From IMG/VR virus record IMGVR_UViG_3300026292_000003, positions 62,001-126,000 of that record: a stretch of DNA of 64,000 bases; one strand, 5' to 3'. Each line of letters opens with the position of its first letter. Position 1 is the stretch's first letter. A program made the position numbers and the translations under genes. Of the stretch, positions 2,888-27,067 are shown piece after piece. Under the pieces are notes generated by a model. The model was given only the letters and a program-made list of their open reading frames with translations. It ran no database searches and had not been told where the DNA came from.

Positions 2888-2981
2888 ATTGCATGGGTTT
2901 CGTACCTATGTAGAATACGTAAGTATTCTTTGCTTATAAAGATTATAAGCAAATCAAATATATTTGATTGGAGAAATCTCT

Positions 2982-5900
2982 ATGGCTTTTAGACAAATTA
3001 AGAGTCCGGCGTTAGCTAACCAGGCGGTTATCGACACCAAATTAGATGTTAGTTCAGTTTCAGGCCAAACAGCAACTACATCTTTGAACTCACTAGATAC
3101 TCTTCTTATTCACGACAATGCAAACGCGGCGTTAAAGAGCATAACTGCGGCCAACTTAATCGCATCTTATGACACTGACGATTTAGGTGAAGGTTCAACG
3201 AACCTATTCTTTACCAATGCAAGAGCTCAATCAGCAGTAGCGGCAGATATCGCTTCAGCTGTAGCGGCGGAAGCATCAATTGCACGTGCGGCAGAAACTG
3301 CAAATGCAAACGATATCGCGGCTGAAATAACAAGAGCGACAACAGCAGAAGGTGTGAATGCGACAGACATAGCTAGTGAAATTACACGTGCAACAGCGGC
3401 AGAAACAGCCCTGGATACGGCGTATAAGGCGGCAGATGCTGGATTACAATCACAAATAAGTAATATTATATCAAACGTGGATCCTGCGGCACTTGACAGT
3501 TTATCTGAAATTGTTGCAGAATTTCAATCACAAGATAGTGCATTAACTGCGGCTATTACAGCTAACTCAACATTAATTAATAACGAGACAGCTAGAGCTC
3601 AAGCGGCAGAACAAGCAAATGCAACTGCAATTAGCAACGAGGCAACAAGAGCACAAGCGGCTGAAGCAACTAACGCATCTGATATTTCAACAGAAGCGGC
3701 AAGAGCAACAGCGGCTGAAAACGCACTTGATGCTAGAGTAACTGCTAATGAAGGTGACATTTCTACACTACAAACTGATTTAGCGGCAGAAATATCAGCA
3801 ACTAACGGTGAAATCACTACACTAACAAATGATTTAGCAAGTGAAATTTCACGTGCAACAGGTGCTGAACAAGCGAATGCTCAAGACATTGCAAACGAAG
3901 CAACGGCAAGAGCAAATGAAGACACAAGTATTAGAGCAGACTTTGCGACAGCAGATGCTACAACTTTAGCATCAGCTCAAACATATGCAGATACAGCAGA
4001 AGCAGATGCAATCGCTACAGCGGCGGCAGATGCAACTACTAAAGCAAACGCGGCACAAGCGGCGGCGGAAGCACACGCAGATACAGTATCGGCGGCAGAG
4101 ACAGCGGCTATCAATACAGCGGTAGCAGTAGTTGACGCTAAAGTTACTACAAACACTACAGACATTGCGGCTCTAGAAACTGTAGTTGGTGATGTAGCAA
4201 ATACACCACTTGACACTACAGCAACTTCTTTAGGTGGAGCGATTAACGAACTACATACTGAAGTTACTACAGCAACAACAAACATTGCAACTAACACAGC
4301 AGACATTGCAACTAACGCAACAGATATCGCAACTAATGCGGCAGATATTGCTAACATTATTAGTAATACTGACCCAGCGGCTCTGGATTCATTAACAGAA
4401 ATTGTTACTGCATTCCAAGCTGGTGATAGTGCGGCGACAGCGGCAATCAATGCTAACGCAACGTCAATTAGTAACGAAGCAACAGCTAGAGCAAACGCAG
4501 ATACAACACTACAAACTAACATCACTGCTGAAGAAACAAGAGCTACAGCGGCTGAAGGTGTTTTAACTGCAAACCTAGCAAGTGAAGTAACTAACAGACA
4601 AGCAGGTGACGCAACTACTTTAGCATCAGCACAAGCATATGCTGATCAAGCAGAAGCAGATGCAATTTCAACTGCGGCGGCTGACGCAACAACTAAAGCA
4701 GACTCTGCAGAAGCAGACGCTAAAGCATATGCTGACACTCTACAAGACACTTTAATTGGTGACAATACTGTAGACGGTACAGCAGGTAATACTGTTACAG
4801 ACAGAATTGCTACAGCTAAAGCGGGTGCAGAATCAACAGCAGAAGCTTATACTGACCAAGAAGTTCTAACTGAAAAGACTAGAGCTATGGCGGCAGAAGC
4901 GGCTAACGCATTAAATATTACAGCGAATACAGGTGATATTGCTACAAACGCAACAGACATTGCAACTAACGCATCAGCTATTTCAACAGAAGTAACTGAC
5001 AGAGTTAATGCAGTAGCTGGTGTAACAACTTCATTAAACAATGAAATAGCAAGAGCACAAGCGGCTGAATTAGTTAATACACAAGCTATTACTGCTGAAG
5101 AAACAAGAGCACTTGCGGCTGAAGCGGCAAACGCAACTGCAATCGCAAACGAAGTATCAAGATCAACAACAGCAGACACGACGCATACAGCTAACATTGC
5201 AACTAACACTAACGATATTGCTACTAACTTAACAAGTATCAATAACGAGGTGGCTAGAGCAACAGCGGCTGAACAAGCACTTACAACTAACCTGGCTACT
5301 GAAACAGCTAGAATTGATTCAATTCTAACTAACACGGACCCAGCGGCGTTAGATTCACTAACTGAAATTGTTTCAGCATTCCAAAGTGCTGATAACACAA
5401 TCAATGGTGCAATCACATCACTATCAACAACAGCCTCAACTGACAGAGCGGCAATACGTTCTGAATTTGCGGCGGCAGACACAGCATTAGACAATCGTCT
5501 AACTACTGAAGAAGCTAACGTTGACGCATTACAAGCCCTAGCAGGTAGTGCGGCACTAGCAACTACAGCTCAAACATTAACTGAAGCAATCAACGAACTG
5601 AACGCAGGTACAGCGGCTGATTTAACTTCTGTTAATAACGCAATTGATGCAGTAGAAAGTGGTGCAGGACTAGCAAGTGATGGCTCTTACTCAGCTCACA
5701 CTGGTACACACGCAATTGACTCAGCTGTGTCATTACATGACGCAGACAGTAAATTGGATGCGGCTATTTTAGCAGAGAAAACAAGAGCAGAAGCGGCTGA
5801 AGCAACATTAACTACTAATGTGGCAACAAACGCAACTAATATCGGAAATAACACAACAGACATTGCAACTAACACAACAGCTATTGCTACAAATGCAACT

Positions 5901-7778
5901 GCTATCTCTACTAATGCATCAGATCTTGCATCAGAAATTACTAGAGCTACAGCGGCAGAAACAGCAAATGCTAACGCAATCACAGCAGAAGCAAATACAG
6001 CTAGAGCGGCAGAAACAGTTAATGCCAACGCAATCGCGGCAGAAACTACTAGAGCACAAGCGGCTGAATCAGCTAATGCATCCGATATAGCAGACAATCT
6101 AACTGAAATTACTGCAACACAATCTGGTGCAGGATTAGCAAATGACGGTACTTACAATACACCTAGTGGATCAAATTACATTGATACTGCTACATCATTG
6201 GCAAGTGCTGACACGAAGTTAGATGCGGCAATCAAAGCTGAAGAAACTAGAGCGACAGCGGCAGAGGGTGTTTTAACTAACAACCTTACAGCTGAAACTA
6301 ATAGAGCTACAGCGGCGGAAGCACAGAACGCAACTGATATCGCGGCGGAAGCTACGAGAGCGGCGGCGGCAGAAACTGTGAATGCAAATGCCATAACAAC
6401 AGTAGCTACTGATTTAGCAACTGAAGTGACTCGTGCAACTGCGGCGGAAAACGCAAATGCGGCAGACATCACATCACTAACAAGCACAGTTAACGATATT
6501 ATCAGCAACACGGATCCAGCGGCGCTAGATTCATTAACTGAAATCGTTACTGCGTTCCAAAATGCGGACAGTACACTAACAGGTGCTGTAGCGGCAAACG
6601 GAACGGCTATTGCGGCAGAAGAAACAAGAGCACTAGCGGCAGAGGCGGCATTAAGCACAGCCTTAACAAATGAAGTAAACGACAACGACACTGACCACGC
6701 GGCGGCGACAACTGACAGGGCGGCTATCCGTACTGAGTTTGCGGCGGCTGATTCAGCTCAAGACGCTGTCATCGCAACTAAACTAGCACTTGCTGGTGGA
6801 ACAATGGCGGGTGACATTGCAATGGGCGGACAAATGGTATCAGGACTGGGTACAGCAGTTAATGCTGGTGACGCAGTTTCTAAAGCAGTTATGGATGCGG
6901 CTATTTCAGCACAAGATATCACTGTATACACTACAGATGATTTAGCTGAAGGTTCAAATCTATACTACACTGATACTAGATCACGTGCGGCAATTAGTGT
7001 CAATGACGTTGCAGGAAACGGCTTGGTAAGTTACGATAATAGCACAGGTGTTATTAGTGTAAATACTAACGAATCAGTTCTTGACTTAACAGATGTATCT
7101 GATACAGCATACACTGGCAAGGACGGATACGTATTAGCAGTTAATGCGAACGAAGACGGTATGGAACTGTCAAACCCACTAAACGTTTTCTCAACACAAG
7201 AGAGACAAACAATTAATGGTGATGGTGTTGCTACGCAATACTCATTAACTTTTACAACAACACAAGATCAAGCATATGTGTTTGTTGGAGGTGTTATTCA
7301 GGATCCATCAACTCACTACACTATCGATAGTGCGGCGAAAACTATCACGTTTAACTCAGCAGTACCAGTTGGTACACAAATTGTTGTGTTATCACCAGGT
7401 GCAGGACTTAACCCAGTACTACTTGCTAACTCAGTATCATTCGACAAATTAGCGGCTGATATTAAAGCATACGTACAAAAAGGTGAAGTATCAGCTACAG
7501 GTTCAACTACAGTTGATTCATTCAACGGTGCGTTGTATCGTTCAGCGAAGTACATCATGCAGGTTGATGACGGTGCAGGTAACTATGAGACACGTGAAGC
7601 TTTAGTAGTACATGATGGTAGTACTGCATACATTACAGAGTACGCAATGGTTTATACTGGTGCAGACTTAATTGGTGATGCAAGTGTTACTATGAACGGA
7701 AACCAAGTTGAATTAACTTATACTCCGACAAGTGGTACAGCTACAGTTAAAGTGATCGCTACTTACATTGATGTGTAA
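2982..7778 (+). CDS. Giant Ala/Thr-rich coiled-coil tail fibre protein (~1598 aa)
   Basis: GGAGA RBS precedes ATG 2982 (MAFRQIK). Repeated E.TRATAAE..NA..I coiled-coil units, four DPAALDSL motifs, TDDL.EG..NL motifs, C-terminal YRSAKY...VHDG domain. Confidence 0.85.
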   Translation: MAFRQIKSPALANQAVIDTKLDVSSVSGQTATTSLNSLDTLLIHDNANAALKSITAANLIASYDTDDLGEGSTNLFFTNARAQSAVAADIASAVAAEASIARAAETANANDIAAEITRATTAEGVNATDIASEITRATAAETALDTAYKAADAGLQSQISNIISNVDPAALDSLSEIVAEFQSQDSALTAAITANSTLINNETARAQAAEQANATAISNEATRAQAAEATNASDISTEAARATAAENALDARVTANEGDISTLQTDLAAEISATNGEITTLTNDLASEISRATGAEQANAQDIANEATARANEDTSIRADFATADATTLASAQTYADTAEADAIATAAADATTKANAAQAAAEAHADTVSAAETAAINTAVAVVDAKVTTNTTDIAALETVVGDVANTPLDTTATSLGGAINELHTEVTTATTNIATNTADIATNATDIATNAADIANIISNTDPAALDSLTEIVTAFQAGDSAATAAINANATSISNEATARANADTTLQTNITAEETRATAAEGVLTANLASEVTNRQAGDATTLASAQAYADQAEADAISTAAADATTKADSAEADAKAYADTLQDTLIGDNTVDGTAGNTVTDRIATAKAGAESTAEAYTDQEVLTEKTRAMAAEAANALNITANTGDIATNATDIATNASAISTEVTDRVNAVAGVTTSLNNEIARAQAAELVNTQAITAEETRALAAEAANATAIANEVSRSTTADTTHTANIATNTNDIATNLTSINNEVARATAAEQALTTNLATETARIDSILTNTDPAALDSLTEIVSAFQSADNTINGAITSLSTTASTDRAAIRSEFAAADTALDNRLTTEEANVDALQALAGSAALATTAQTLTEAINELNAGTAADLTSVNNAIDAVESGAGLASDGSYSAHTGTHAIDSAVSLHDADSKLDAAILAEKTRAEAAEATLTTNVATNATNIGNNTTDIATNTTAIATNATAISTNASDLASEITRATAAETANANAITAEANTARAAETVNANAIAAETTRAQAAESANASDIADNLTEITATQSGAGLANDGTYNTPSGSNYIDTATSLASADTKLDAAIKAEETRATAAEGVLTNNLTAETNRATAAEAQNATDIAAEATRAAAAETVNANAITTVATDLATEVTRATAAENANAADITSLTSTVNDIISNTDPAALDSLTEIVTAFQNADSTLTGAVAANGTAIAAEETRALAAEAALSTALTNEVNDNDTDHAAATTDRAAIRTEFAAADSAQDAVIATKLALAGGTMAGDIAMGGQMVSGLGTAVNAGDAVSKAVMDAAISAQDITVYTTDDLAEGSNLYYTDTRSRAAISVNDVAGNGLVSYDNSTGVISVNTNESVLDLTDVSDTAYTGKDGYVLAVNANEDGMELSNPLNVFSTQERQTINGDGVATQYSLTFTTTQDQAYVFVGGVIQDPSTHYTIDSAAKTITFNSAVPVGTQIVVLSPGAGLNPVLLANSVSFDKLAADIKAYVQKGEVSATGSTTVDSFNGALYRSAKYIMQVDDGAGNYETREALVVHDGSTAYITEYAMVYTGADLIGDASVTMNGNQVELTYTPTSGTATVKVIATYIDV

Positions 7779-18209: not shown

Positions 18210-18984
18210 TAATGGTGAAGATTTAATATTGGCTATGGGAGCTCCAGGTTCAAGATGGAGTGGAGCAATACGTATACTATCTTTGATGTATGAAAATATT
18301 AATACATCGGATAACAATGACGAATGGAACTACGAAAAGTCTGTAAGTTATAACAAATATTTACAAGCTACTAGGCTTGAAGATAGACGTGAAGAACCAA
18401 ATAGACAAATTAAAGTTGGCTGGCATCGTGGTGCATATTGGGGTCCAGGAAATCCAGCAGGTGATAAATTTGATGTATTAGATACACTAACTAAAGAAGA
18501 GATAATAGAAGAATTTAAAAAGCCTTTTACTAATTGGGAACCAGGAATTAAAATAATTAAGAGTCACTGGTTCAGTTATCATATTCCTTTATTAAGAGAA
18601 TTATTTCCAAAAGCTATACTGTGGTCATTTCATGATACTGATAAGATTTGCCAAGACTGGTGGCATACTGTTGGCGGTTGGGAAATTTCCTATCCTAATT
18701 ATGATTGGTATAAAGATGACGAAACTATGCTTAAACAAATAGGCATAGAAAATAATAATATAAAAGATAATTTTAATTTAAAAAGATATACTACTTGGAA
18801 AGAAGCAGTTAAAGAGTTAGGCTTTCCTGTAGACATAAGAACGCCAGCAGAAATAATAGATATGGAACCAAAATTTATAGATTCTTTTAAACCGTCAATG
18901 TATAGTAATTCAGAAAACTTTAATAAGTTCTTAGATTCAGTTTTTAGCAGAAAAGAAATGGGTATTATTAACCCAACTTTGTAG
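18202..18984 (+). CDS. Sulfotransferase-like P-loop protein
   Basis: LILAMGAPGSRWS loop and IIKSHWF motif resemble PAPS-binding sulfotransferase folds, but are divergent. Confidence 0.45.
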   Translation: MNNNGEDLILAMGAPGSRWSGAIRILSLMYENINTSDNNDEWNYEKSVSYNKYLQATRLEDRREEPNRQIKVGWHRGAYWGPGNPAGDKFDVLDTLTKEEIIEEFKKPFTNWEPGIKIIKSHWFSYHIPLLRELFPKAILWSFHDTDKICQDWWHTVGGWEISYPNYDWYKDDETMLKQIGIENNNIKDNFNLKRYTTWKEAVKELGFPVDIRTPAEIIDMEPKFIDSFKPSMYSNSENFNKFLDSVFSRKEMGIINPTL

Positions 18985-19402
18985 AGTGTTGCTCGTATAC
19001 AGTTCTTACTTTTTTAATAAACTGTTTTGAGTTACATTGTATTTTAGCACCTGGGTGTAATGGTCTTGGCCAATTACCTATTTTAACCCAACAATAACCA
19101 TCACTTTCATTATTTAATATAGGAATAAATTCTTCATCTATAGTAACAACAAAGCTATGGTATATAAATTTTTTATTAGGACTTGTAAATTTATTAATAG
19201 GAATAACTTTTTTAATATCAGGAACTAATCCTAGTTCCTCTTCAATTTCTCTATACAATGTATCAATTGGTTTTTCGTTATTATCCGATTTGCCTCCGAA
19301 GAAGCCCCACGTTCTAGGGTGATTAACTTCACCACTTCTGTGTTGTAACATAACTCTTCCGGTATCAGTGCTAAGAAATATACATCCTGCGGCTGTTATC
19401 AT
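18968..19402 (-). CDS. NUDIX hydrolase
   Basis: Nudix box GGKSDNNEKPIDTLYREIEEELG; start at ATG 19402 (MITAAGCIF). Confidence 0.9.
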   Translation of the reverse strand: MITAAGCIFLSTDTGRVMLQHRSGEVNHPRTWGFFGGKSDNNEKPIDTLYREIEEELGLVPDIKKVIPINKFTSPNKKFIYHSFVVTIDEEFIPILNNESDGYCWVKIGNWPRPLHPGAKIQCNSKQFIKKVRTVYEQHSTKLG

Positions 19403-19479
19403 ATGTGTCCTATCCAATGTGTGCAATCGTCGTGTGGGTCATCGCATTCACTACAAGTAGAGTCTCCAGTATCCTGCAT
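19399..19479 (-). CDS. Putative 26-aa Cys/His micropeptide (MQDTGDSTCSECDDPHDDCTHWIGHI)
   Basis: AAGGA upstream; overlaps the gp15 end; ATGA-coupled to NUDIX. Confidence 0.45.
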   Translation of the reverse strand: MQDTGDSTCSECDDPHDDCTHWIGHI

Positions 19480-20812
19480 TATAGATTCCTTCATAACTGT
19501 TAACCCATTCTGTTCCGTTCCATTCTAATTGATCACTACTTGATAAGTTTGTAACGTATTGTGTATCGGATACTGTACTGCTATCAAAACTAACATTCCA
19601 AGATGAACCGTTGTATTCAATAATGTCATATTTGTTAGCAACTAATCCGCTCCAAGTTGGTGTTGATGGAATAGGATTGATTAATATATAACGTTGTCCT
19701 ATTGCTGAACTAGGAACTGTCCCGTCCCCTGGGTAATTAATTGATGGATCTAAAATAGCATTTACTGCTGATAATGTATTTGTAGGTAAAGTTGAAGTAT
19801 CAATGTCTACAGTTAATAAGTTAGGATTACTTGGGTGTTCATCTAAACGTCCAATAATATCTTCATCTTTAGCTCCTGGGTCTTTTGATTTTCTAAGTCT
19901 TAATTGACTTATTCCAGGTCTTAATACACCAAATGGAGTAAGTTCTTTAGTCCATTCTAAAACGTTTCCGTCATCATCTAAATTACTTCCGTTGGTATTT
20001 AATAGCTGAAGGTCATTGTTCTCATATTTTACTTTTCTGTTTTCATATGTTACAACTGTATATTGTAACGTTTCGTTATTAAATGGTTGTTCAGCTTTAA
20101 ATAGATCTAAGTTTTCATCATCCAAGTTATAAAGTTCACTAATGATTGTGTGAATTAATTTTTGTTGTTTAACCTTTGCAGGAGGATTTATATAAACTGG
20201 TATATCAAATGACATTGTAGCAACATCAATAATATCGTCAATACTTGATCCAACACTTCTTGTACTCCAAGTAGTATTAGTAAGTTCTACGTGAGATAAT
20301 GCAGTCCAGTCTAATGGACTAGCATTTGTTCTAATATCTAATGTAGGATTAAATAAAACAAGCATCTGTTCTAGTAACTGTAATTTTTGATCTGTATTTG
20401 ATGTCCATACGTCTGCGTTCATTTGCATTAAGTATGGAACAGGAGCATGACGCTCTACAGTATAACTATTACCTTTTTCGTTTTTATATTCTCCAGTAGT
20501 TTGGTCGTATTTCTTTTCGTATACCTGAACTTTATCGACATGATCTTGGTAAGTACGTCTTTCAGGTATTAAATTTAAATTAGTTACATAACAACTTATA
20601 AATGGAACAGTATTCATAATGTTTTCACTGTTCTCTCTTGTTATGTGAGCCGCCATTCTGTTTATGTCACCATAACGTACTGGAACTTTATGATATACTG
20701 GAAGACCAGAATCTTCATTTTTGCCCATTTGTACACTGAAGCCACTAAACAATCTTATAAATTGTTGAATGTATCTTCTTATTTGTTTATCATAAAAGTA
20801 TTGTTGGCTCAT
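19451..20812 (-). CDS. T4 gp15-like tail terminator/sheath stabiliser with C-terminal extension
   Basis: YFYDKQIRRYI..F..LFS, VPVRYG, PVPY, QLLEQMLVLFNP motifs. Confidence 0.85.
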   Translation of the reverse strand: MSQQYFYDKQIRRYIQQFIRLFSGFSVQMGKNEDSGLPVYHKVPVRYGDINRMAAHITRENSENIMNTVPFISCYVTNLNLIPERRTYQDHVDKVQVYEKKYDQTTGEYKNEKGNSYTVERHAPVPYLMQMNADVWTSNTDQKLQLLEQMLVLFNPTLDIRTNASPLDWTALSHVELTNTTWSTRSVGSSIDDIIDVATMSFDIPVYINPPAKVKQQKLIHTIISELYNLDDENLDLFKAEQPFNNETLQYTVVTYENRKVKYENNDLQLLNTNGSNLDDDGNVLEWTKELTPFGVLRPGISQLRLRKSKDPGAKDEDIIGRLDEHPSNPNLLTVDIDTSTLPTNTLSAVNAILDPSINYPGDGTVPSSAIGQRYILINPIPSTPTWSGLVANKYDIIEYNGSSWNVSFDSSTVSDTQYVTNLSSSDQLEWNGTEWVNSYEGIYNAGYWRLYL

Positions 20813-21879
20813 TTTTTGAAATCACTTTTTGGTTTAATAACTTGAGATAGAGGCTGACGTTCTGGAAATTCCTGATCGTCAATAATTGTTGTAGCCTTGT
20901 TATTGATAAAGCTACTAGCATTATAAGTTCTATCACTCCAAGTTTGTTCAGTGACATTATCATATAGTCTATGCCACTTACTTCCACGCCTTACAAATAA
21001 TCTATTAGGCGTAAAGTCTGTTCTAATAAAGTATTCACCTTCTTTCGGGTTAGCTGGAAACTGGTCACCTTGTTGTAAAGTTTCACCATGTTTGTATTCG
21101 CTGTCAACTTCTTCTTGACCAAATAAATGTTCTGCAAGTGGTAAACCTAATGGATCAGCTTCTTCGGCACTTTTCACAATAGCATTACTAATATTAAGTT
21201 CTGTTTTATAAGCACTAACTTTATTTTTAAGGCTATCTGGATCTTTAGCACTACCAAGTATATCTTTGTATTCTTGTGTATCTGTTAATGGTGCTACTTT
21301 AATTCTCCAAATGTGTGGGTACCAAGTTTGTGAAAATCCTTCACTACCCCTTGCGGCATCTTGAACTACATAAAACTTATTAATAGCATCTCTATCGTTG
21401 CTTAATAATAGTTCATCTCTAAGGTGAGGTAATTCAATAACATCTCCTGGCATTAATCTTCTACCAAGTCTTTCTACCATATCGTTTATATGAAAAGATA
21501 TAAACAAAGTATCGTTAGTTAAAAATAAACCAAATTGAGTTAAGTCAAAGTCGTTATCACTAACGTTATACACGCCACGAAGTTCAAAAATATCAGGATC
21601 ATATTTACGATCTCTGTTTTCCATAAACAGTAAGTCTTGTATGTTAGTTTCATCAATTATACCTTCTGGATTTACTTCTTCACTTGTTACATTATCTATT
21701 TCCATACCACTGCCGTAGTTCGGCTCGCTAGGATCATTGTTGCCTTGTTGAGGTTGTGGACCCAAATACTTGTGAACGTGTATAGCCGTACCGCCTATAT
21801 CGAACTGTTCTCGTATAGTTCTGTCCATGAATTTGTAATCATTACCTTTATAAGGCTTATATAGTGTAAAACGTGGCAT
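20809..21879 (-). CDS. T4 gp14-like neck/head-closure protein
   Basis: DLLFMENRDRKY, DLTQFGLFL, PGDVIELPH; adjacent to gp15; minus-strand late promoter CATAAATA at 21901-21908. Confidence 0.75.
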   Translation of the reverse strand: MPRFTLYKPYKGNDYKFMDRTIREQFDIGGTAIHVHKYLGPQPQQGNNDPSEPNYGSGMEIDNVTSEEVNPEGIIDETNIQDLLFMENRDRKYDPDIFELRGVYNVSDNDFDLTQFGLFLTNDTLFISFHINDMVERLGRRLMPGDVIELPHLRDELLLSNDRDAINKFYVVQDAARGSEGFSQTWYPHIWRIKVAPLTDTQEYKDILGSAKDPDSLKNKVSAYKTELNISNAIVKSAEEADPLGLPLAEHLFGQEEVDSEYKHGETLQQGDQFPANPKEGEYFIRTDFTPNRLFVRRGSKWHRLYDNVTEQTWSDRTYNASSFINNKATTIIDDQEFPERQPLSQVIKPKSDFKK

Positions 21880-21900: not shown

Positions 21901-21940
21901 TATTTATGCCTTTTGATACTAATATGATTATGGATAAATA
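21901..21940. promoter_or_regulatory. Divergent pair of late promoters
   Basis: TATTTATG (minus-strand CATAAATA) at 21901 and GATAAATA at 21933. Confidence 0.7.
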
Positions 21941-21972
21941 TTATATACTCACATAATATAAGGAATCACAAT

Positions 21973-22941
21973 ATGTTTAGATTTTATACAGAAAGAAAAT
22001 GGGCGTTATGGGCTTGGTTAGGTTCAGCAATCATTTTATCATCTTTATGGGTTCAAGTAAAAATTGACGTTAAAATCAATGAATGGTTTGGTCAGTTTTA
22101 CGATATGATCCAAAAAGCACTGGCTACACCTAATGCAATTACCATAGGTGAATACTGGGCCAGTTTATTATCTTTTATTACACTAGCAGGAATATATGTA
22201 GCACTAGCAGTAGCAATAAGTTTCTTTACAGCTCACTTCTTGTTTAGATGGAGAACTGCAATGGTAGAATGGTATCATGCAGTTTATGATAGAGCAAGAA
22301 AAATAGAAGGAGCGGCACAAAGGGTACAAGAAGATACTATAAAATTCTCTAGAATAATGGAATCACTTGGTACAAGTTTAATTGAATCAATTATGGTTCT
22401 TGTGCAGTTTGTTCCAATCTTGTTAGGACTATCAATAGGTATACCAATATTCTTTTTTGGTGATTGGCAATATGGATTAGTTACGGGTGCTATTATTTGG
22501 TCCGTAGGTGGTACATTATTTTTAATTGCATTAGGTTGGTTACTAAGATTAGTTGGCGTTGAATATGACTTGCAAAAGAAAGAAGCCGCTTATCGTAAAA
22601 TACTTGTTATAGCAGAAGATGACGATAACGTCAGACCTAAAACAATAAATGAGTTATTTGATGATGTTAGGAAAATTCATTTCTTATCATATATTAAATA
22701 TCTTTATTTTAATATTGGTCGTATTGCTTATTTACAAGCAAACGTTTTAAGTGCCTACGTATTTCTTGCACCAGCCATTGTAGCAGGCGTTGTTACATTA
22801 GGTGTGATGCAACAAATAATTAGAGCATTTGGTCGTGTAGAAGGAAGTATGCAATACTTACTTAAAGCATGGCCTACAATTATTGAATTAATGAGTGTAT
22901 ATAGACGTTTAAGAGAGTTTGAAAAACAGATTACTAAATAA
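21973..22941 (+). CDS. sbmA: SbmA/BacA-family peptide transporter (TM domain only)
   Basis: INEWFGQFYDMIQKAL, FRWRTAM, IEGAAQRVQEDT, EAAYRKILV, W.TIIELMSVYRRL. Confidence 0.9.
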   Translation: MFRFYTERKWALWAWLGSAIILSSLWVQVKIDVKINEWFGQFYDMIQKALATPNAITIGEYWASLLSFITLAGIYVALAVAISFFTAHFLFRWRTAMVEWYHAVYDRARKIEGAAQRVQEDTIKFSRIMESLGTSLIESIMVLVQFVPILLGLSIGIPIFFFGDWQYGLVTGAIIWSVGGTLFLIALGWLLRLVGVEYDLQKKEAAYRKILVIAEDDDNVRPKTINELFDDVRKIHFLSYIKYLYFNIGRIAYLQANVLSAYVFLAPAIVAGVVTLGVMQQIIRAFGRVEGSMQYLLKAWPTIIELMSVYRRLREFEKQITK

Positions 22942-22958
22942 TCATAGAGGAGAGATTT

Positions 22959-23453
22959 ATGAAATCAGTTCAATTACAAGTAGCTTCAGACCATAGAGGT
23001 ATGGAGTTAAAAGATCAATTATCAAATTGGTTAACACCTGTTGACGAAGATGTACCTACTAAATTTGGTATAGATTTATTTCACGATATAGGAATTTACG
23101 ATGATAAGAAAAAAGTAGACTATCCTCGAATAGTACAAATGTTCTGTAAGGATATATCTACTCCTGATAAAGTAACTGCAGGTTGGACAGTATACAATAA
23201 AGGAATACTTATTTGTGGATCTGGCTATGGAGTTTCTATAGCGGCCAACAGGCATCCATATGTTAGAGCAGTAGTTTGTAGAACTGCTAAAGAAGCAGAG
23301 ATGTCACGTAAACACAATGATGCTAATGTACTATGTTTAGGTGCTGACTTTACATCATTAAACCAAGCAAAGAAAATATGCGAAGCATTTTTTACTACTG
23401 ACTTTGAAGGTGGAAGACACTTGAAAAGAATAAAAAGTATAAGCACATACTAA
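22959..23453 (+). CDS. rpiB: Ribose-5-phosphate isomerase B (RpiB/LacAB)
   Basis: ASDHRG, VDYP, GILICGSGYGVSIAAN, SRKHNDANVLCLG, FEGGRH..R. Confidence 0.93.
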   Translation: MKSVQLQVASDHRGMELKDQLSNWLTPVDEDVPTKFGIDLFHDIGIYDDKKKVDYPRIVQMFCKDISTPDKVTAGWTVYNKGILICGSGYGVSIAANRHPYVRAVVCRTAKEAEMSRKHNDANVLCLGADFTSLNQAKKICEAFFTTDFEGGRHLKRIKSISTY

Positions 23454-23454
23454 T

Positions 23455-23826
23455 ATGATATTAATATTATTAACAACTTTTTTATTATGGGCTATATTAG
23501 TTTATATAACTTATTCTGCAACCGGGTTAACACGTGTACGAGAAGTGTACACAATGTGGTTCGATAAACAATATTGGAAAAAAAGATATAATGTTGTTGA
23601 AGCACTAGCCTGGAGCGGAAAGTTATTAGTTATATTGCCTGCTATATTCTTTGGGTATGAAGTATGGTGGGCTCATATAATTACACTAGCAACATCTGCT
23701 CTTTTAATATGGGTTAGTGAACAAAAACTATTACCTACTCTTTTAGCATTTAATACATTATGGATAGGTATAAGTTCATATATATTAGTTAGATACTTTT
23801 ATACAAATTATTGGATGATACAATGA
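23455..23826 (+). CDS. Hypothetical multi-pass membrane protein
   Basis: About four hydrophobic segments. Confidence 0.65.
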   Translation: MILILLTTFLLWAILVYITYSATGLTRVREVYTMWFDKQYWKKRYNVVEALAWSGKLLVILPAIFFGYEVWWAHIITLATSALLIWVSEQKLLPTLLAFNTLWIGISSYILVRYFYTNYWMIQ

Positions 23827-25031
23827 AGATATGCATAATTGGTGGCGGAACAGCCGGTTGGTGGTGTGCAGGTTATATGGAAAAGTTTTTACCTGACGCA
23901 GAACTAACACTTATAGAAAGTGATCAAATTCCTACAATAGGAGTAGGAGAAGGAACACTTCCACAGATTGGTGTATTTTTTGAAGAACTAGGCATTCCAG
24001 AAAAAGAATGGATGGATGGTTGTAATGCAGTTCACAAATATGGTAACATAAAATATGAATGGGATGAACTTGGTGCAGATCCATACTTAATGACATTCTG
24101 GCAAAACGAACCAAAGTCATTATTTAATGATTGGTATCAACAATACAAGCAAGGTAAAAAAGTTAGAGATGATATTAATCCAGACTTATATGATAAAGAA
24201 GGTTGGAGAGCAGTAGCATATCATTTAGATGCTAATCTTGCAGGACACGTTGTACGTGATCATTGTAAACGTGTTAATCATGTTATTGATACATTAGAAG
24301 AACTTCCTCCAGGATATGACTTATATGTAGATGCTACAGGATTTCGCAGACAGTTTGTAAAAGATAAAACTGAAGAAACATTTAGTGAACATCATAAAGT
24401 TAATCGTTCTTGGGTTAGACCATTAGAGTTAGAAGATGAAATTACACCATATACAAGAACACTAGCTAGACCTGACGGTTGGCAGTTTATGGTAGACTTA
24501 CAACATAGAACAGGAACAGGTTATGTTTTTAGTACTGATTTTGTAAGTGAAGAAGAAGCATTAGAAAAGTTTAAAGGATGGACTGCACATAGAACTCCTT
24601 TTAAAGGTATAGAACCACGACTACTAAAATGGAAACCTGGAGTATTAAAGAATCCTTGGGTAGACAATGTAGTCTCTATTGGACTAGGTCAAGGATTTGT
24701 AGATCCATTAGAAGCAAATGGATTATTTTTAGTGCAATACAGTATTACGTTATTAGTAAGATGTATACTAAAAGGTTCATCACCAAAAGCATATAATAAG
24801 GCAATAATGAAAGTACAAAAAGATAATTCAGACTACATATTACATCACTATATGTTAAGTGATCGTACAGATACTGAATTTTGGAAATACTATAGTAAGT
24901 TTGATGCAAGTAAAACTCTATGGGAAAGCTATACAAAGAATTCTAACAAGTATACTAGTCTATATCCTGATGCAATATGGGCATCTTTGGGCTTATATTT
25001 TGACAATTTTAAGCATTATCCAGGAAAATAA
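23823..25031 (+). CDS. Flavin-dependent tryptophan-halogenase-family protein
   Basis: IIGGGTAGW, IGVGEGT, catalytic-Lys region AVHKYG, VDATGF, GFVDPLEANG. Confidence 0.88.
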   Translation: MKICIIGGGTAGWWCAGYMEKFLPDAELTLIESDQIPTIGVGEGTLPQIGVFFEELGIPEKEWMDGCNAVHKYGNIKYEWDELGADPYLMTFWQNEPKSLFNDWYQQYKQGKKVRDDINPDLYDKEGWRAVAYHLDANLAGHVVRDHCKRVNHVIDTLEELPPGYDLYVDATGFRRQFVKDKTEETFSEHHKVNRSWVRPLELEDEITPYTRTLARPDGWQFMVDLQHRTGTGYVFSTDFVSEEEALEKFKGWTAHRTPFKGIEPRLLKWKPGVLKNPWVDNVVSIGLGQGFVDPLEANGLFLVQYSITLLVRCILKGSSPKAYNKAIMKVQKDNSDYILHHYMLSDRTDTEFWKYYSKFDASKTLWESYTKNSNKYTSLYPDAIWASLGLYFDNFKHYPGK

Positions 25032-25096
25032 ATCAACAAAAAACAAAAAAAGATGTAAGTCCTTGATTTTTAAGGGTTTTTTTCTGCTGAATAAGG

Positions 25097-25125
25097 TTGA
25101 CATATAAGACGTCTTACTGTAAACT
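25097..25125 (+). promoter_or_regulatory. Sigma70-like early/middle promoter
   Basis: TTGACA-N17-TAAACT. Confidence 0.75.
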
Positions 25126-25156: not shown

Positions 25157-25510
25157 ATGATGAAATATAAACTTTTTCAAATCCACGTTACAAAAGCAGA
25201 GCATGATAAAATTAATGCTGAAGGTCACGATTCTGTAGAAAAGCATAAACTTAAACTTGATATGTCTTTCGCTAGAGATAAAACTTCATCGATTGCTAAA
25301 GAAGCATTTGATAAAGGTTATTACACACACGTTTCAAATATTACAACTGAAAAAGGTCTTGAAGGTGTATTTGAAGTAGGTAATATTGGTCCAGAAGAAA
25401 ATATTGAAAGACTTCACCCTATGTATTCAACTTCAGTAGGTGATATTGTTGTTGATCCTGAAGGCAACAAACACGTTGTTGCTAGTTATGGTTTCCAAGA
25501 GGTAGAATAA
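25157..25510 (+). CDS. Hypothetical early protein (YodL-like S.SVGDIVV motif)
   Basis: AAGGAG RBS; MYSTSVGDIVV...V..YGF. Confidence 0.55.
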   Translation: MMKYKLFQIHVTKAEHDKINAEGHDSVEKHKLKLDMSFARDKTSSIAKEAFDKGYYTHVSNITTEKGLEGVFEVGNIGPEENIERLHPMYSTSVGDIVVDPEGNKHVVASYGFQEVE

Positions 25511-27028: not shown

Positions 27029-27067
27029 AATCTGATAAATACAATACGTAGTAGGAGAAACTAACAT

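What the first reader, a model, noticed from the sequence alone, without database searches (positions are those of the whole stretch)
21933..25031. Late operon joining an SbmA/BacA peptide importer, RpiB, a membrane protein and a flavin halogenase
Seen: four co-oriented, closely spaced genes behind a late promoter. Known: SbmA/BacA import peptides such as microcins and NCR peptides; RpiB interconverts pentose phosphates. Inference: either nutrient (peptide) scavenging plus nucleotide or sugar precursor supply, or part of a peptide/small-molecule pathway with the halogenase and the oxygenases.
Basis: partly seen in the sequence, partly recalled or inferred. Interest (0 to 1): 0.6.

Follow-up and report, generated by a model that had tools for sequence, protein, structure and literature searches.

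The report
Phage late-gene island anchored by SbmA importer
A large marine phage carries, behind one of its own late promoters, a well-preserved copy of a bacterial SbmA-type membrane importer followed by three swappable accessory genes; the importer is shared by many ocean phages, but the four genes do not form one pathway.

Summary
Four same-strand genes lie at 21973-25031 with gaps of 17, 1 and -4 nt: an SbmA/BacA-family transporter, RpiB, a small membrane protein and a flavin-halogenase-family enzyme. A GATAAATA motif sits 39 nt upstream. This genome places that motif before tail fibre, sheath and tube genes, so "late promoter" is reasonable but unproven.

The window comes from a marine jumbo myophage: a 221-kb record, with the same proteins on a 330-kb contig.

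Only the transporter is a fixed feature. Among 27 distinct relatives at the same locus:
- 1 has all four genes (this phage).
- 3 have RpiB plus a halogenase.
- 4 have the membrane protein plus a halogenase.
- 3 have a halogenase alone.
- 16 have none of the three.

So this is a mosaic accessory-gene island, not a pathway operon.

The transporter matches the six-helix core of E. coli SbmA. It keeps all five proton-ladder glutamates, lacks the TM0 domain, and is under strong purifying selection (dN/dS 0.02-0.10). About 207 IMG/VR stretches encode a relative, in at least four or five genomic contexts. It is near-universal in SAR11 genomes (115 of 121).

Substrate and host remain unknown. The halogenase is a short, motif-divergent subtype.

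The parts
19451..20812 (-). gp15-like tail sheath stabiliser. It marks the flank as the structural (late) module.
   Evidence: PF16724 E 1e-24 and phrog_11196 E 6e-99. Best phage hits are jumbo myophages (Phosso, PA5oct, Atu_ph07) at 34-38% identity.
20809..21879 (-). Virion structural protein, transcribed divergently from the island. It is the conserved left anchor of the locus in relatives.
   Evidence: phrog_11591 E 3e-94. It lies next to SbmA in all syntenic IMG/VR loci.
21901..21907 (-). Late-promoter-like ATAAATA motif facing the structural gene, 28 nt before its start.
   Evidence: Motif census of the genome.
21933..21940 (+). Late-promoter-like GATAAATA motif, 39 nt before the SbmA ATG.
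   Evidence: The motif is enriched upstream of genes: GATAAATA is seen 18 times against 0.5 expected, and ATAAATA occurs in 32 of 100 upstream regions. It lies before tail fibre, sheath and tube genes. An [A/C]TAAATA[G/T] element is kept 38-53 nt before the SbmA start in syntenic relatives.
21973..22941 (+). SbmA/BacA-family (SLiPT) inner-membrane importer. It comprises core TM1-6 only, with no TM0 domain and no ATPase domain.
   Evidence: PF05992 E 1e-138. It aligns to E. coli SbmA residues 77-393 at E 3e-89, with E193, E203, E276, E287, E378, R190, R280, K281, D288, Y116 and Y368 kept and Y285 replaced by Ile (residue roles from PMC8442886). dN/dS is 0.02-0.10.
22959..23453 (+). RpiB-type sugar-phosphate isomerase carrying two short insertions.
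   Evidence: PF02502 E 6e-41. It aligns to solved RpiB structures at E 2e-24, with the DH, CGSG (Cys), HND and GGRH..R motifs kept. A GAGGAG ribosome-binding site precedes it.
23455..23826 (+). Small membrane protein of unknown function (123 aa, 3-4 hydrophobic segments).
   Evidence: No Pfam or PHROG family. Hydropathy. There are 319 relatives, none named; cellular ones are about 53% identical and have no conserved context. Feature-based look-alikes are viral clusters of unknown function.
23823..25031 (+). Short flavin-dependent-halogenase-family enzyme (402 aa). Its start overlaps the preceding stop as ATGA; an alternative TTG start lies at 23811.
   Evidence: PF04820 E 2e-70 and phrog_2928 E 1e-82. 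Against RebH and SttH, the FAD motif, catalytic Lys and PLE Glu are kept, WxWxIP is replaced by GWQFMVDL, and the C-terminal substrate module is absent.
25057..25085 (+). Weak hairpin followed by a T run after the halogenase stop. It may mark the end of the unit, but the fold is not significant.
   Evidence: Fold energy is -7.3 kcal/mol with z-score -0.03. The terminator scan did not call it.
25097..25125 (+). Sigma-70-like promoter (TTGACA, 17 nt, TAAACT) before the next gene at 25157. It marks the right boundary of the unit.
   Evidence: GGTTGACA-type motifs form a second enriched upstream class in this genome.

Best explanation
The region is a mosaic accessory-gene island inserted in the tail/neck structural module of a marine jumbo myophage. 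It is probably read as one late transcript from a phage-specific GATAAATA promoter.

Its fixed element is a working SbmA-type, proton-coupled inner-membrane importer. The phage probably makes this protein late in infection to keep or raise uptake of some hydrophilic or peptide-like solute while host gene expression decays. The logic is the same as for other phage copies of key host membrane proteins.

The three downstream genes are independent, exchangeable cassettes that ride on the same transcript:
- RpiB would convert ribulose-5-phosphate to ribose-5-phosphate for nucleotide synthesis.
- The small membrane protein and the short flavin-halogenase-like enzyme have unknown substrates.

Shown: gene identities, residue conservation, purifying selection, promoter-motif placement and independent assortment. 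Inferred: late co-transcription, direction and substrate of transport, and the benefit to the phage.
For: - Family matches and tight junctions.
- The promoter motif is genome-wide specific to gene starts, including structural genes. It is present before SbmA, conserved in relatives and absent inside the island.
- SbmA keeps all five glutamates that E. coli mutagenesis shows are needed for proton-driven transport (PMC8442886).
- SbmA dN/dS is 0.02-0.10 in phage-phage and phage-cell pairs.
- About 207 IMG/VR stretches encode a relative, in at least four or five unrelated genomic contexts.
- The family is near-core in Pelagibacter's family: 115 of 121 sampled genomes.
- Cassette tally over 27 distinct syntenic alleles: 1 with all four genes, 3 with RpiB plus Hal, 4 with the membrane protein plus Hal, 3 with Hal only, 16 with none.
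- RpiB, the halogenase and the membrane protein each also occur in viral contigs without SbmA.
- This phage's halogenase is 96% identical to that of a lineage whose backbone genes are only 78-87% identical, which points to cassette exchange.
- Other phage contigs place the membrane protein after an ammonium transporter and PRPP synthetase. That fits an uptake and nucleotide-supply theme.
- Contigs from one metatranscriptome lie at 100% identity on the neighbouring structural gene and on RpiB.
Against: - No direct evidence of transcription timing or of a single transcript. The RNA-library contigs are short, do not bridge genes, miss the membrane protein and halogenase, and could be DNA carry-over.
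- The substrate is unknown, and direction of transport is assumed from E. coli SbmA.
- The cytoplasmic-gate Tyr285 is Ile, and the TM0 domain is missing, so behaviour may differ from the studied proteins.
- The membrane protein is found near halogenases in three different arrangements. Those two genes may therefore be functionally linked after all.
- The hairpin after the island is not significant, so transcription may read through.
Confidence: 0.6

Rival explanations
1. The four genes form one pathway. A peptide or small molecule would be imported by SbmA, handled by the membrane protein and halogenated by the flavoenzyme, with RpiB supplying a sugar moiety.
For: The genes are tightly packed, with a translationally coupled ATGA overlap between the membrane protein and the halogenase. 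The membrane protein recurs near halogenases in three arrangements, including one with a distant 478-aa halogenase plus a 2OG oxygenase and a methyltransferase.
Against: Only 1 of 27 distinct syntenic alleles has all four genes, and 16 have SbmA with none of the others. Each of the three also occurs without SbmA. The closest membrane-protein relatives (80%) sit next to Amt and PRPP synthetase, with no halogenase within 5 kb. No precursor peptide or flavin reductase gene was seen in the island.
Confidence: 0.1
2. The phage SbmA serves conflict rather than nutrition. It might change the infected cell's sensitivity to peptide toxins, exclude other phages, or perturb membrane potential to time lysis.
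For: In enterobacteria SbmA is best known as the entry route of microcins, bleomycin and Bac7 (PMC8442886). Late expression next to virion genes would suit a lysis-timing or exclusion role.
Against: The phage copies keep the full proton ladder and gate residues. They evolve under the same tight constraint as the near-universal chromosomal copies of free-living SAR11. That argues for the same transport activity rather than a derived role. No holin, endolysin or immunity genes are adjacent.
Confidence: 0.12
3. The transporter imports a cofactor such as cobalamin, as its structural relatives Rv1819c and ABCD4 do, to feed a phage enzyme.
For: The SbmA fold resembles the membrane domain of the cobalamin transporter Rv1819c (PMC8442886). 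In one other phage context, SbmA lies three genes upstream of an ATPase with a weak match to a PHROG annotated 'porphyrin biosynthesis' (phrog_249, E 5e-5).
Against: This phage encodes a class I ribonucleotide reductase, with NrdA and NrdB both present. No B12-dependent enzyme was identified. From my own recollection, not checked here, SAR11 is not known to need B12.
Confidence: 0.05
4. The island is decaying cargo: recently captured host genes with no role for the phage.
For: The region is a recombination hot-spot with variable content.
Against: All four frames are intact with catalytic or functional residues kept. SbmA dN/dS is 0.02-0.10 among phage copies whose synonymous sites are saturated. 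SbmA is retained across phage lineages whose structural proteins are only 65-80% identical. In the five candidate-host genomes tested, RpiB is only 42-43% identical, and the halogenase and membrane protein were not found.
Confidence: 0.03

Closest known systems
E. coli SbmA / Sinorhizobium BacA (SLiPT secondary peptide importers; PDB 7P34)
   Same: Full-length PF05992 match. It aligns over the whole TM1-6 core at E 3e-89. All five proton-ladder glutamates, R190, R280, K281, D288, Y116 and Y368 are conserved. There is no nucleotide-binding domain.
   Different: It is 322 aa rather than 406 aa and lacks the whole TM0 domain (E. coli residues 1-73). The stop-to-stop frame is only 337 aa. Tyr285 of the cytoplasmic gate is Ile. 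The substrate is unknown. The gene is phage-encoded and belongs to a marine subfamily that is 80-96% identical across SAR11, SAR116-labelled and gammaproteobacterial genomes.
Chromosomal SbmA-like gene of Pelagibacter (conserved locus nhaA - gpx - Zn-ribbon | sbmA - glpX - recJ)
   Same: 83-89% protein identity, the same length and the same TM0-less architecture.
   Different: Synonymous divergence is saturated (dS 1.2-2.7), so the similarity reflects constraint rather than recent capture. This phage's copy falls in the other half of the tree from the main Pelagibacter clade. It is driven by a phage late-type promoter rather than the host context.
sbmA annotated in Acinetobacter phage MD-2021a (254 kb)
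   Same: A jumbo-sized phage record carrying an SbmA-family gene, annotated 'putative microcin B17 uptake protein'.
   Different: Only 42% identical, and from a different host group and habitat. Apart from two short unannotated Salmonella and Escherichia records, no other record in the 50,697-record phage collection matched.
Accessory metabolic genes of T4-like marine phages (cyanophage talC/zwf/gnd/CP12 and pstS; the HTVC008M halogenase and dioxygenase)
   Same: Host-like metabolic and uptake genes are inserted among late or structural genes. In HTVC008M a halogenase and a PhyH dioxygenase sit in the same module, between gp15/terS and terL/sheath. RpiB fits the pentose-phosphate-to-nucleotide theme (my recollection of the cyanophage literature, not checked here).
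   Different: I found no paper linking SbmA with phage auxiliary genes or with SAR11 in the held library. The pelagimyophage survey does not mention it. This phage's structural genes are closest to jumbo myophages, not to HTVC008M or cyanophages.
VirX1 (cyanophage Syn10 halogenase, PDB 6QGM) and tryptophan halogenases RebH, PrnA and SttH
   Same: PF04820 family with the GGGTAGW FAD motif. The catalytic Lys and the PLE Glu are invariant in the alignment.
   Different: About 30% identity and 110-150 aa shorter, lacking the C-terminal substrate module. WxWxIP is replaced by GWQF..[D/G]L in this whole short phage clade, and Ser becomes Ala in the FxxPxxSxG motif. Activity and substrate are untested.

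Membership tests
SbmA/BacA (SLiPT, PF05992) | Full-length match to the family profile | tested here: met
   E 1.3e-138, covering profile positions 2-314 of 315.
SbmA/BacA (SLiPT, PF05992) | Glutamate ladder needed for proton-driven transport (E193, E203, E276, E287, E378 in E. coli) | tested here: met
   These align to E120, E130, E204, E215 and E305 (positions read off the printed alignment). Their roles come from PMC8442886.
SbmA/BacA (SLiPT, PF05992) | Gate and cavity residues (R190, R280, K281, Y285, D288, Y368, Y116) | tested here: inconclusive
   Six of the seven are kept. The cytoplasmic-gate Tyr285 is Ile213.
SbmA/BacA (SLiPT, PF05992) | N-terminal TM0 domain (TM0a/0b), described as a hallmark of SbmA and BacA | tested here: not met
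   The alignment starts at E. coli residue 77. The stop-to-stop frame is 337 aa. Pelagibacter homologues are also 320-340 aa.
SbmA/BacA (SLiPT, PF05992) | Secondary transporter without a fused or adjacent ABC ATPase | tested here: met
   The protein ends at residue 322 and the next gene is RpiB. No ATPase domain is present in the island.
SbmA/BacA (SLiPT, PF05992) | Import of peptides or bleomycin | not testable with these tools
   This needs complementation of an E. coli sbmA mutant or a proteoliposome assay.
RpiB/LacAB sugar-phosphate isomerase (PF02502) | Family profile plus active-site motifs (Asp-His near the N terminus, catalytic Cys in CGxG, His-Asn, Arg-His..Arg) | tested here: met
   E 6e-41. 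The SDHRG, CGSGYG, HNDANV and GGRHLKR motifs align to the same motifs in solved RpiB structures 4EM8 and 3HE8. Residue roles are from my memory of the E. coli RpiB literature.
Flavin-dependent (tryptophan) halogenase (PF04820) | FAD-binding GxGxxG, catalytic Lys (RebH K79) and conserved Glu | tested here: met
   GGGTAGW, Lys72 and the PLE motif are invariant in alignment A1 with VirX1 and the HTVC008M enzyme.
Flavin-dependent (tryptophan) halogenase (PF04820) | WxWxIP signature motif | tested here: not met
   This protein has GWQFMVDL. Two close short relatives have GWQFKIGL and GWQFIIDL. VirX1, HTVC008M and a 478-aa phage enzyme keep W-x-W.
Flavin-dependent (tryptophan) halogenase (PF04820) | C-terminal substrate-binding module of tryptophan halogenases (proteins of 511-550 aa) | tested here: not met
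   The protein is 402 aa. Most alignments to solved enzymes end near query residues 355-369, which corresponds to chain residues about 409-448 of 511-550. Relatives of this clade are 386-410 aa.
T4-type late promoter | TATAAATA box a short distance upstream of late genes | tested here: inconclusive
   The exact consensus is depleted (3 found, 12.9 expected). The variant [G/C/A]ATAAATA is strongly enriched before gene starts, including structural genes and SbmA. The phage late sigma factor and transcription timing were not tested.
Operon encoding one pathway | Co-transcription: same strand, short gaps, one promoter, no internal promoter motif | tested here: inconclusive
   The anatomy fits. RNA-library contigs cover only parts of the region and do not bridge genes.
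Operon encoding one pathway | Conserved co-occurrence of the member genes in relatives | tested here: not met
   1 of 27 distinct syntenic alleles has all four genes, and 16 have SbmA alone. Each other gene also occurs without SbmA.

The most novel reading that the evidence does not exclude
A TM0-less SbmA-type importer is a near-core gene of SAR11 and other streamlined ocean bacteria. It is also the fixed, late-expressed accessory gene of a cosmopolitan family of marine jumbo myophages, and it has moved between phages and cells more than once. If so, uptake of one still-unknown solute through this single-protein, proton-driven importer limits phage production in the oligotrophic ocean. Phages would also be vehicles that spread the gene across bacterial classes.
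Probability: 0.35. Interest if true: 0.65.

Novelty: new member of a known kind. Interest (0 to 1): 0.5.

Why it matters
Phage-borne uptake genes such as pstS and amt show which resources limit virus production in the sea. An SbmA-type importer has not, as far as the searched literature shows, been discussed as such a gene. Yet about 207 IMG/VR stretches encode a relative, it is under strong constraint, and it mirrors a near-universal SAR11 gene of unknown substrate.

Finding the cargo would say something about both SAR11 physiology and phage reprogramming of it. The TM0-less form is also a natural minimal version of the SLiPT fold for structural work.

The negative result matters too. The attractive "importer plus halogenase pathway" reading should not be carried forward.

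Tried and rejected
- T4 consensus late promoter: the exact TATAAATA box is depleted. It was replaced by the genome-specific variant found by k-mer enrichment.
- Intrinsic terminator after the halogenase: the hairpin is no better than shuffled sequence.
- Host inference from SbmA. Identity is 80-90% to Pelagibacter, SAR116-labelled, GC-35% flagellated alphaproteobacterial and GC-46-50% gammaproteobacterial genomes alike, and dS is saturated. This phage's copy does not fall in the Pelagibacter clade.
- Independent acquisitions. A second phage group clusters with Pelagibacter (SH-aLRT 95). However, an AU test does not reject a single clade of all phage copies (p 0.09, with the group named after seeing the tree). 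More than one acquisition is therefore suggested, not shown.
- Host search with the conserved structural protein. Nothing was found in 401 genomes of Pelagibacter's order, 351 of the order of the GC-35% group or 351 of the order of the Litoricola-like group.
- Taxonomy of candidate genomes was not returned by the tool.
- Cobalamin-import idea: the phage has a class I RNR with both NrdA and NrdB.
- Function of the 123-aa membrane protein. It has no Pfam or PHROG family, no structural hit in the Atlas and no conserved cellular neighbourhood.
- The nucleotide search of the phage collection found nothing.
- There are no Rfam families or tRNAs in the window.
- The literature search found no paper linking SbmA to phage auxiliary genes or to SAR11.
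- No structure prediction, complex prediction or large representative search was run, because no open question here depended on them.
Full report
**What is there.** The window is bases 62001-126000 of a 221,643-bp IMG/VR virus record that CheckV rates about 60% complete. The same proteins occur on a 329,779-bp metagenomic contig. GC content is about 33%. The region lies in a structural module. To the left, on the minus strand, are a NUDIX hydrolase, a gp15-like tail sheath stabiliser and a virion protein. To the right are a protein matching a head-tail adaptor PHROG family, the tail sheath, the tail tube and the large terminase. The gp15-like protein is closest to jumbo myophages (Sinorhizobium phage Phosso, Pseudomonas phage PA5oct, Agrobacterium phage Atu_ph07) at 34-38% identity. 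It is not closest to Pelagibacter phage HTVC008M or the cyanophages.

**The four genes.**
- ORF 21973-22941 is a full-length SbmA_BacA protein (E 1e-138).
- ORF 22959-23453 is an RpiB-type isomerase (E 6e-41).
- ORF 23455-23826 has no family and 3-4 hydrophobic segments.
- The last ORF is a Trp_halogenase-family protein (E 2e-70).

The gaps between them are 17 nt (with a GAGGAG ribosome-binding site), 1 nt and a 4-nt ATGA overlap. The overlap makes ATG 23823 a better halogenase start than the TTG at 23811. After the last stop there is only a weak, non-significant hairpin. It is followed by a sigma-70-like promoter for the next gene.

**The promoter.** The T4 late box TATAAATA is under-represented: 3 copies against 12.9 expected. 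A k-mer enrichment over 100 upstream regions of the whole record picked out [G/C/A]ATAAATA instead. GATAAATA appears 18 times against 0.5 expected. Of 78 genomic copies of ATAAATA, about 50 lie within 80 nt upstream of a same-strand start. Those starts include tail fibre genes, the sheath, the tube and virion proteins. The 93-nt divergent spacer carries two copies, one per strand. One lies 28 nt before the structural gene and one 39 nt before SbmA. No copy lies inside the island, and the next is at 27035. Syntenic relatives keep an [A/C]TAAATA[G/T] element 38-53 nt before SbmA. Late co-transcription is therefore a reasonable inference, but it has not been measured. In one metatranscriptome, short contigs match the structural gene and RpiB at 100% and SbmA at 96%. 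They do not bridge genes, they miss the last two genes, and DNA carry-over cannot be excluded.

**The transporter.** The protein aligns to E. coli SbmA residues 77-393 (E 3e-89). The published structure assigns residues 1-73 to a TM0 domain outside the dimeric TM1-6 core (PMC8442886), and that domain is absent here. There is no room for it upstream, because the stop-to-stop frame is 337 aa. All five glutamates whose mutation abolishes proton-driven transport are present, as are R190, R280, K281, D288, Y116 and Y368. Only the gate residue Tyr285 differs, being Ile. Pairwise dN/dS is 0.02-0.10 in every comparison.

**How widespread the transporter is.**
- About 207 IMG/VR stretches encode a relative.
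- Among the best 80, roughly 47 share this locus. Others sit in at least three or four unrelated contexts, some on contigs of 242 and 328 kb that share other genes with this phage.
- In bacteria the same TM0-less protein is found in 115 of 121 sampled genomes of Pelagibacter's family. There it sits in a conserved chromosomal locus next to nhaA, gpx, glpX and recJ.
- It is also found in SAR116-labelled, GC-35% flagellated alphaproteobacterial and GC-46-50% gammaproteobacterial genomes. All are 80-89% identical to the phage protein.

**Why identity is not a host clue.** Synonymous divergence from every other copy is 0.9 or higher. This holds even against the closest phage relatives, whose flanking structural genes show dS of 0.2-0.45. 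Meanwhile dN stays near 0.07-0.13 whether the partner is a close phage, a distant phage or a bacterium. The 85-90% identity is therefore a constraint plateau, and the higher dS at SbmA between close relatives points to allele replacement at this hot-spot. In the tree, this phage's copy lies in the half that holds most phage copies, the GC-35% alphaproteobacteria and a Litoricola-like group. A second phage group joins the main Pelagibacter clade with SH-aLRT 95. An AU test does not reject one clade of all phage copies (p 0.09). Searches for the phage's structural protein in about 1,100 genomes of three candidate orders found nothing. The host is unresolved.

**The other three genes.**
- *RpiB* keeps the active-site motifs of solved RpiB enzymes and has two short insertions. 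It is only 42-43% identical to the RpiB of three of the five candidate-host genomes tested, and no match was found in the other two.
- *The halogenase-family protein* keeps the FAD motif, the catalytic Lys and the PLE Glu. It replaces WxWxIP with GWQFMVDL, changes Ser to Ala in the second signature motif, and lacks the C-terminal substrate module. It belongs to a large clade of 386-410-aa proteins from marine metagenomes, found on contigs up to 375 kb. It has no match in the five candidate-host genomes tested.
- *The 123-aa membrane protein* has only unnamed relatives and no conserved cellular neighbourhood.

**Linkage.** Among 27 distinct SbmA alleles at the syntenic locus:
- 1 has all four genes (this phage).
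- 3 have RpiB plus a 56-57%-identical halogenase.
- 4 have the membrane protein (63-65%) plus a 94-96%-identical halogenase.
- 3 have a 60%-identical halogenase alone.
- 16 have none of the three. In those, the distance from the SbmA stop to the next anchor gene is 148-1925 nt; the longer intervals hold unrelated ORFs.

RpiB relatives (27 loci), halogenase relatives (12) and membrane-protein relatives (13) also occur in viral contigs without SbmA. This phage's halogenase is 96% identical to that of a lineage whose backbone proteins are 78-87% identical, so cassettes move between lineages. The only recurrent pairing is the membrane protein with a halogenase, seen in three arrangements. Even so, its closest relatives (80%) follow an ammonium transporter and PRPP synthetase.

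**Interpretation.** The best-supported reading is a late-transcribed accessory island. Its constant member is a functional proton-coupled importer, and its remaining members are independent cassettes. One of them, RpiB, plausibly feeds ribose-5-phosphate into nucleotide synthesis. The idea that the importer brings in cobalamin finds no support, because the phage has a class I reductase. The substrate, the timing and the host need experiments.

**Comparison and novelty.** Accessory uptake and pentose-phosphate genes in marine T4-like phages are a known kind. HTVC008M even carries a halogenase and a dioxygenase at the equivalent place in its structural module. An SbmA-family gene is annotated in one Acinetobacter jumbo phage record at 42% identity. 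I found no paper in the held library that connects SbmA with phage auxiliary genes or with SAR11. I therefore file the island as a new member of a known kind. A more interesting but unproven possibility is that this importer is a general, exchanged determinant of phage production in oligotrophic bacterioplankton.

Noticed in passing
L066:4353-5909 and L075 (IMG/VR relatives of the locus): In one phage lineage, SbmA is preceded by a MotA/TolQ/ExbB-family proton-channel protein (PF01618, E 1e-9) and two unknown ORFs. It is followed by an Asp/Arg beta-hydroxylase-like protein. This hints at a TonB-type energiser paired with the importer.
   Followed up: partly
L231:2530-5363 (117-kb IMG/VR contig): An 80%-identical relative of the 123-aa membrane protein follows an ammonium transporter (PF00909) and a PRPP synthetase. 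A solute-binding-protein-like gene lies further downstream. This is another uptake-plus-nucleotide-precursor island.
   Followed up: partly
L236:1905-6073: A 69%-identical relative of the membrane protein lies beside a full-length (478-aa) Trp_halogenase, a 2OG-Fe(II) oxygenase and a SAM methyltransferase, in divergent orientation.
   Followed up: partly
window 21973-22941 versus flanks, compared with L004 and L011: Between close relatives, SbmA is more diverged (dS 0.91-0.96, dN 0.07-0.10) than the flanking structural genes (dS 0.22-0.57, dN 0.013-0.026). This points to allele replacement by recombination at this spot.
   Followed up: partly
window 25097-25125 and about 7-17 other upstream regions of the 221-kb record: A second class of upstream motif pairs GGTTGACA (-35-like) with AAGATGTCTTA-type words. 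This is probably the early or middle promoter class of this phage, and one copy precedes the gene after the island.
   Followed up: no
window 2964-7778: A 1604-aa ORF with no clear family (weak phrog_13589 match) coincides with a GC rise to 0.43-0.44, against about 0.33 elsewhere in the window.
   Followed up: no
window 18968-20812 (- strand): A NUDIX/MutT hydrolase sits directly beside the gp15-like sheath stabiliser. The same pairing is annotated in PA5oct-like Pseudomonas jumbo phages, so this is conserved micro-synteny with that group.
   Followed up: no
L260 (Pelagibacter phage HTVC008M 63198-65157): HTVC008M carries a phytanoyl-CoA dioxygenase and a tryptophan halogenase between gp15/terS and terL/sheath. 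This is the equivalent hot-spot of the structural module.
   Followed up: partly
L222:5001-6191: A 73%-identical halogenase relative on a 152-kb viral contig has an in-frame stop within the matched range. It may be a pseudogene, or the coordinates may be slightly off.
   Followed up: no
L090 and nine similar loci (GC about 35%): A cellular group of flagellated alphaproteobacteria (genome at least 2.2 Mb, with molybdopterin genes next to sbmA) has SbmA copies nested among the phage copies in the tree. Phage-to-cell transfer is possible.
   Followed up: partly
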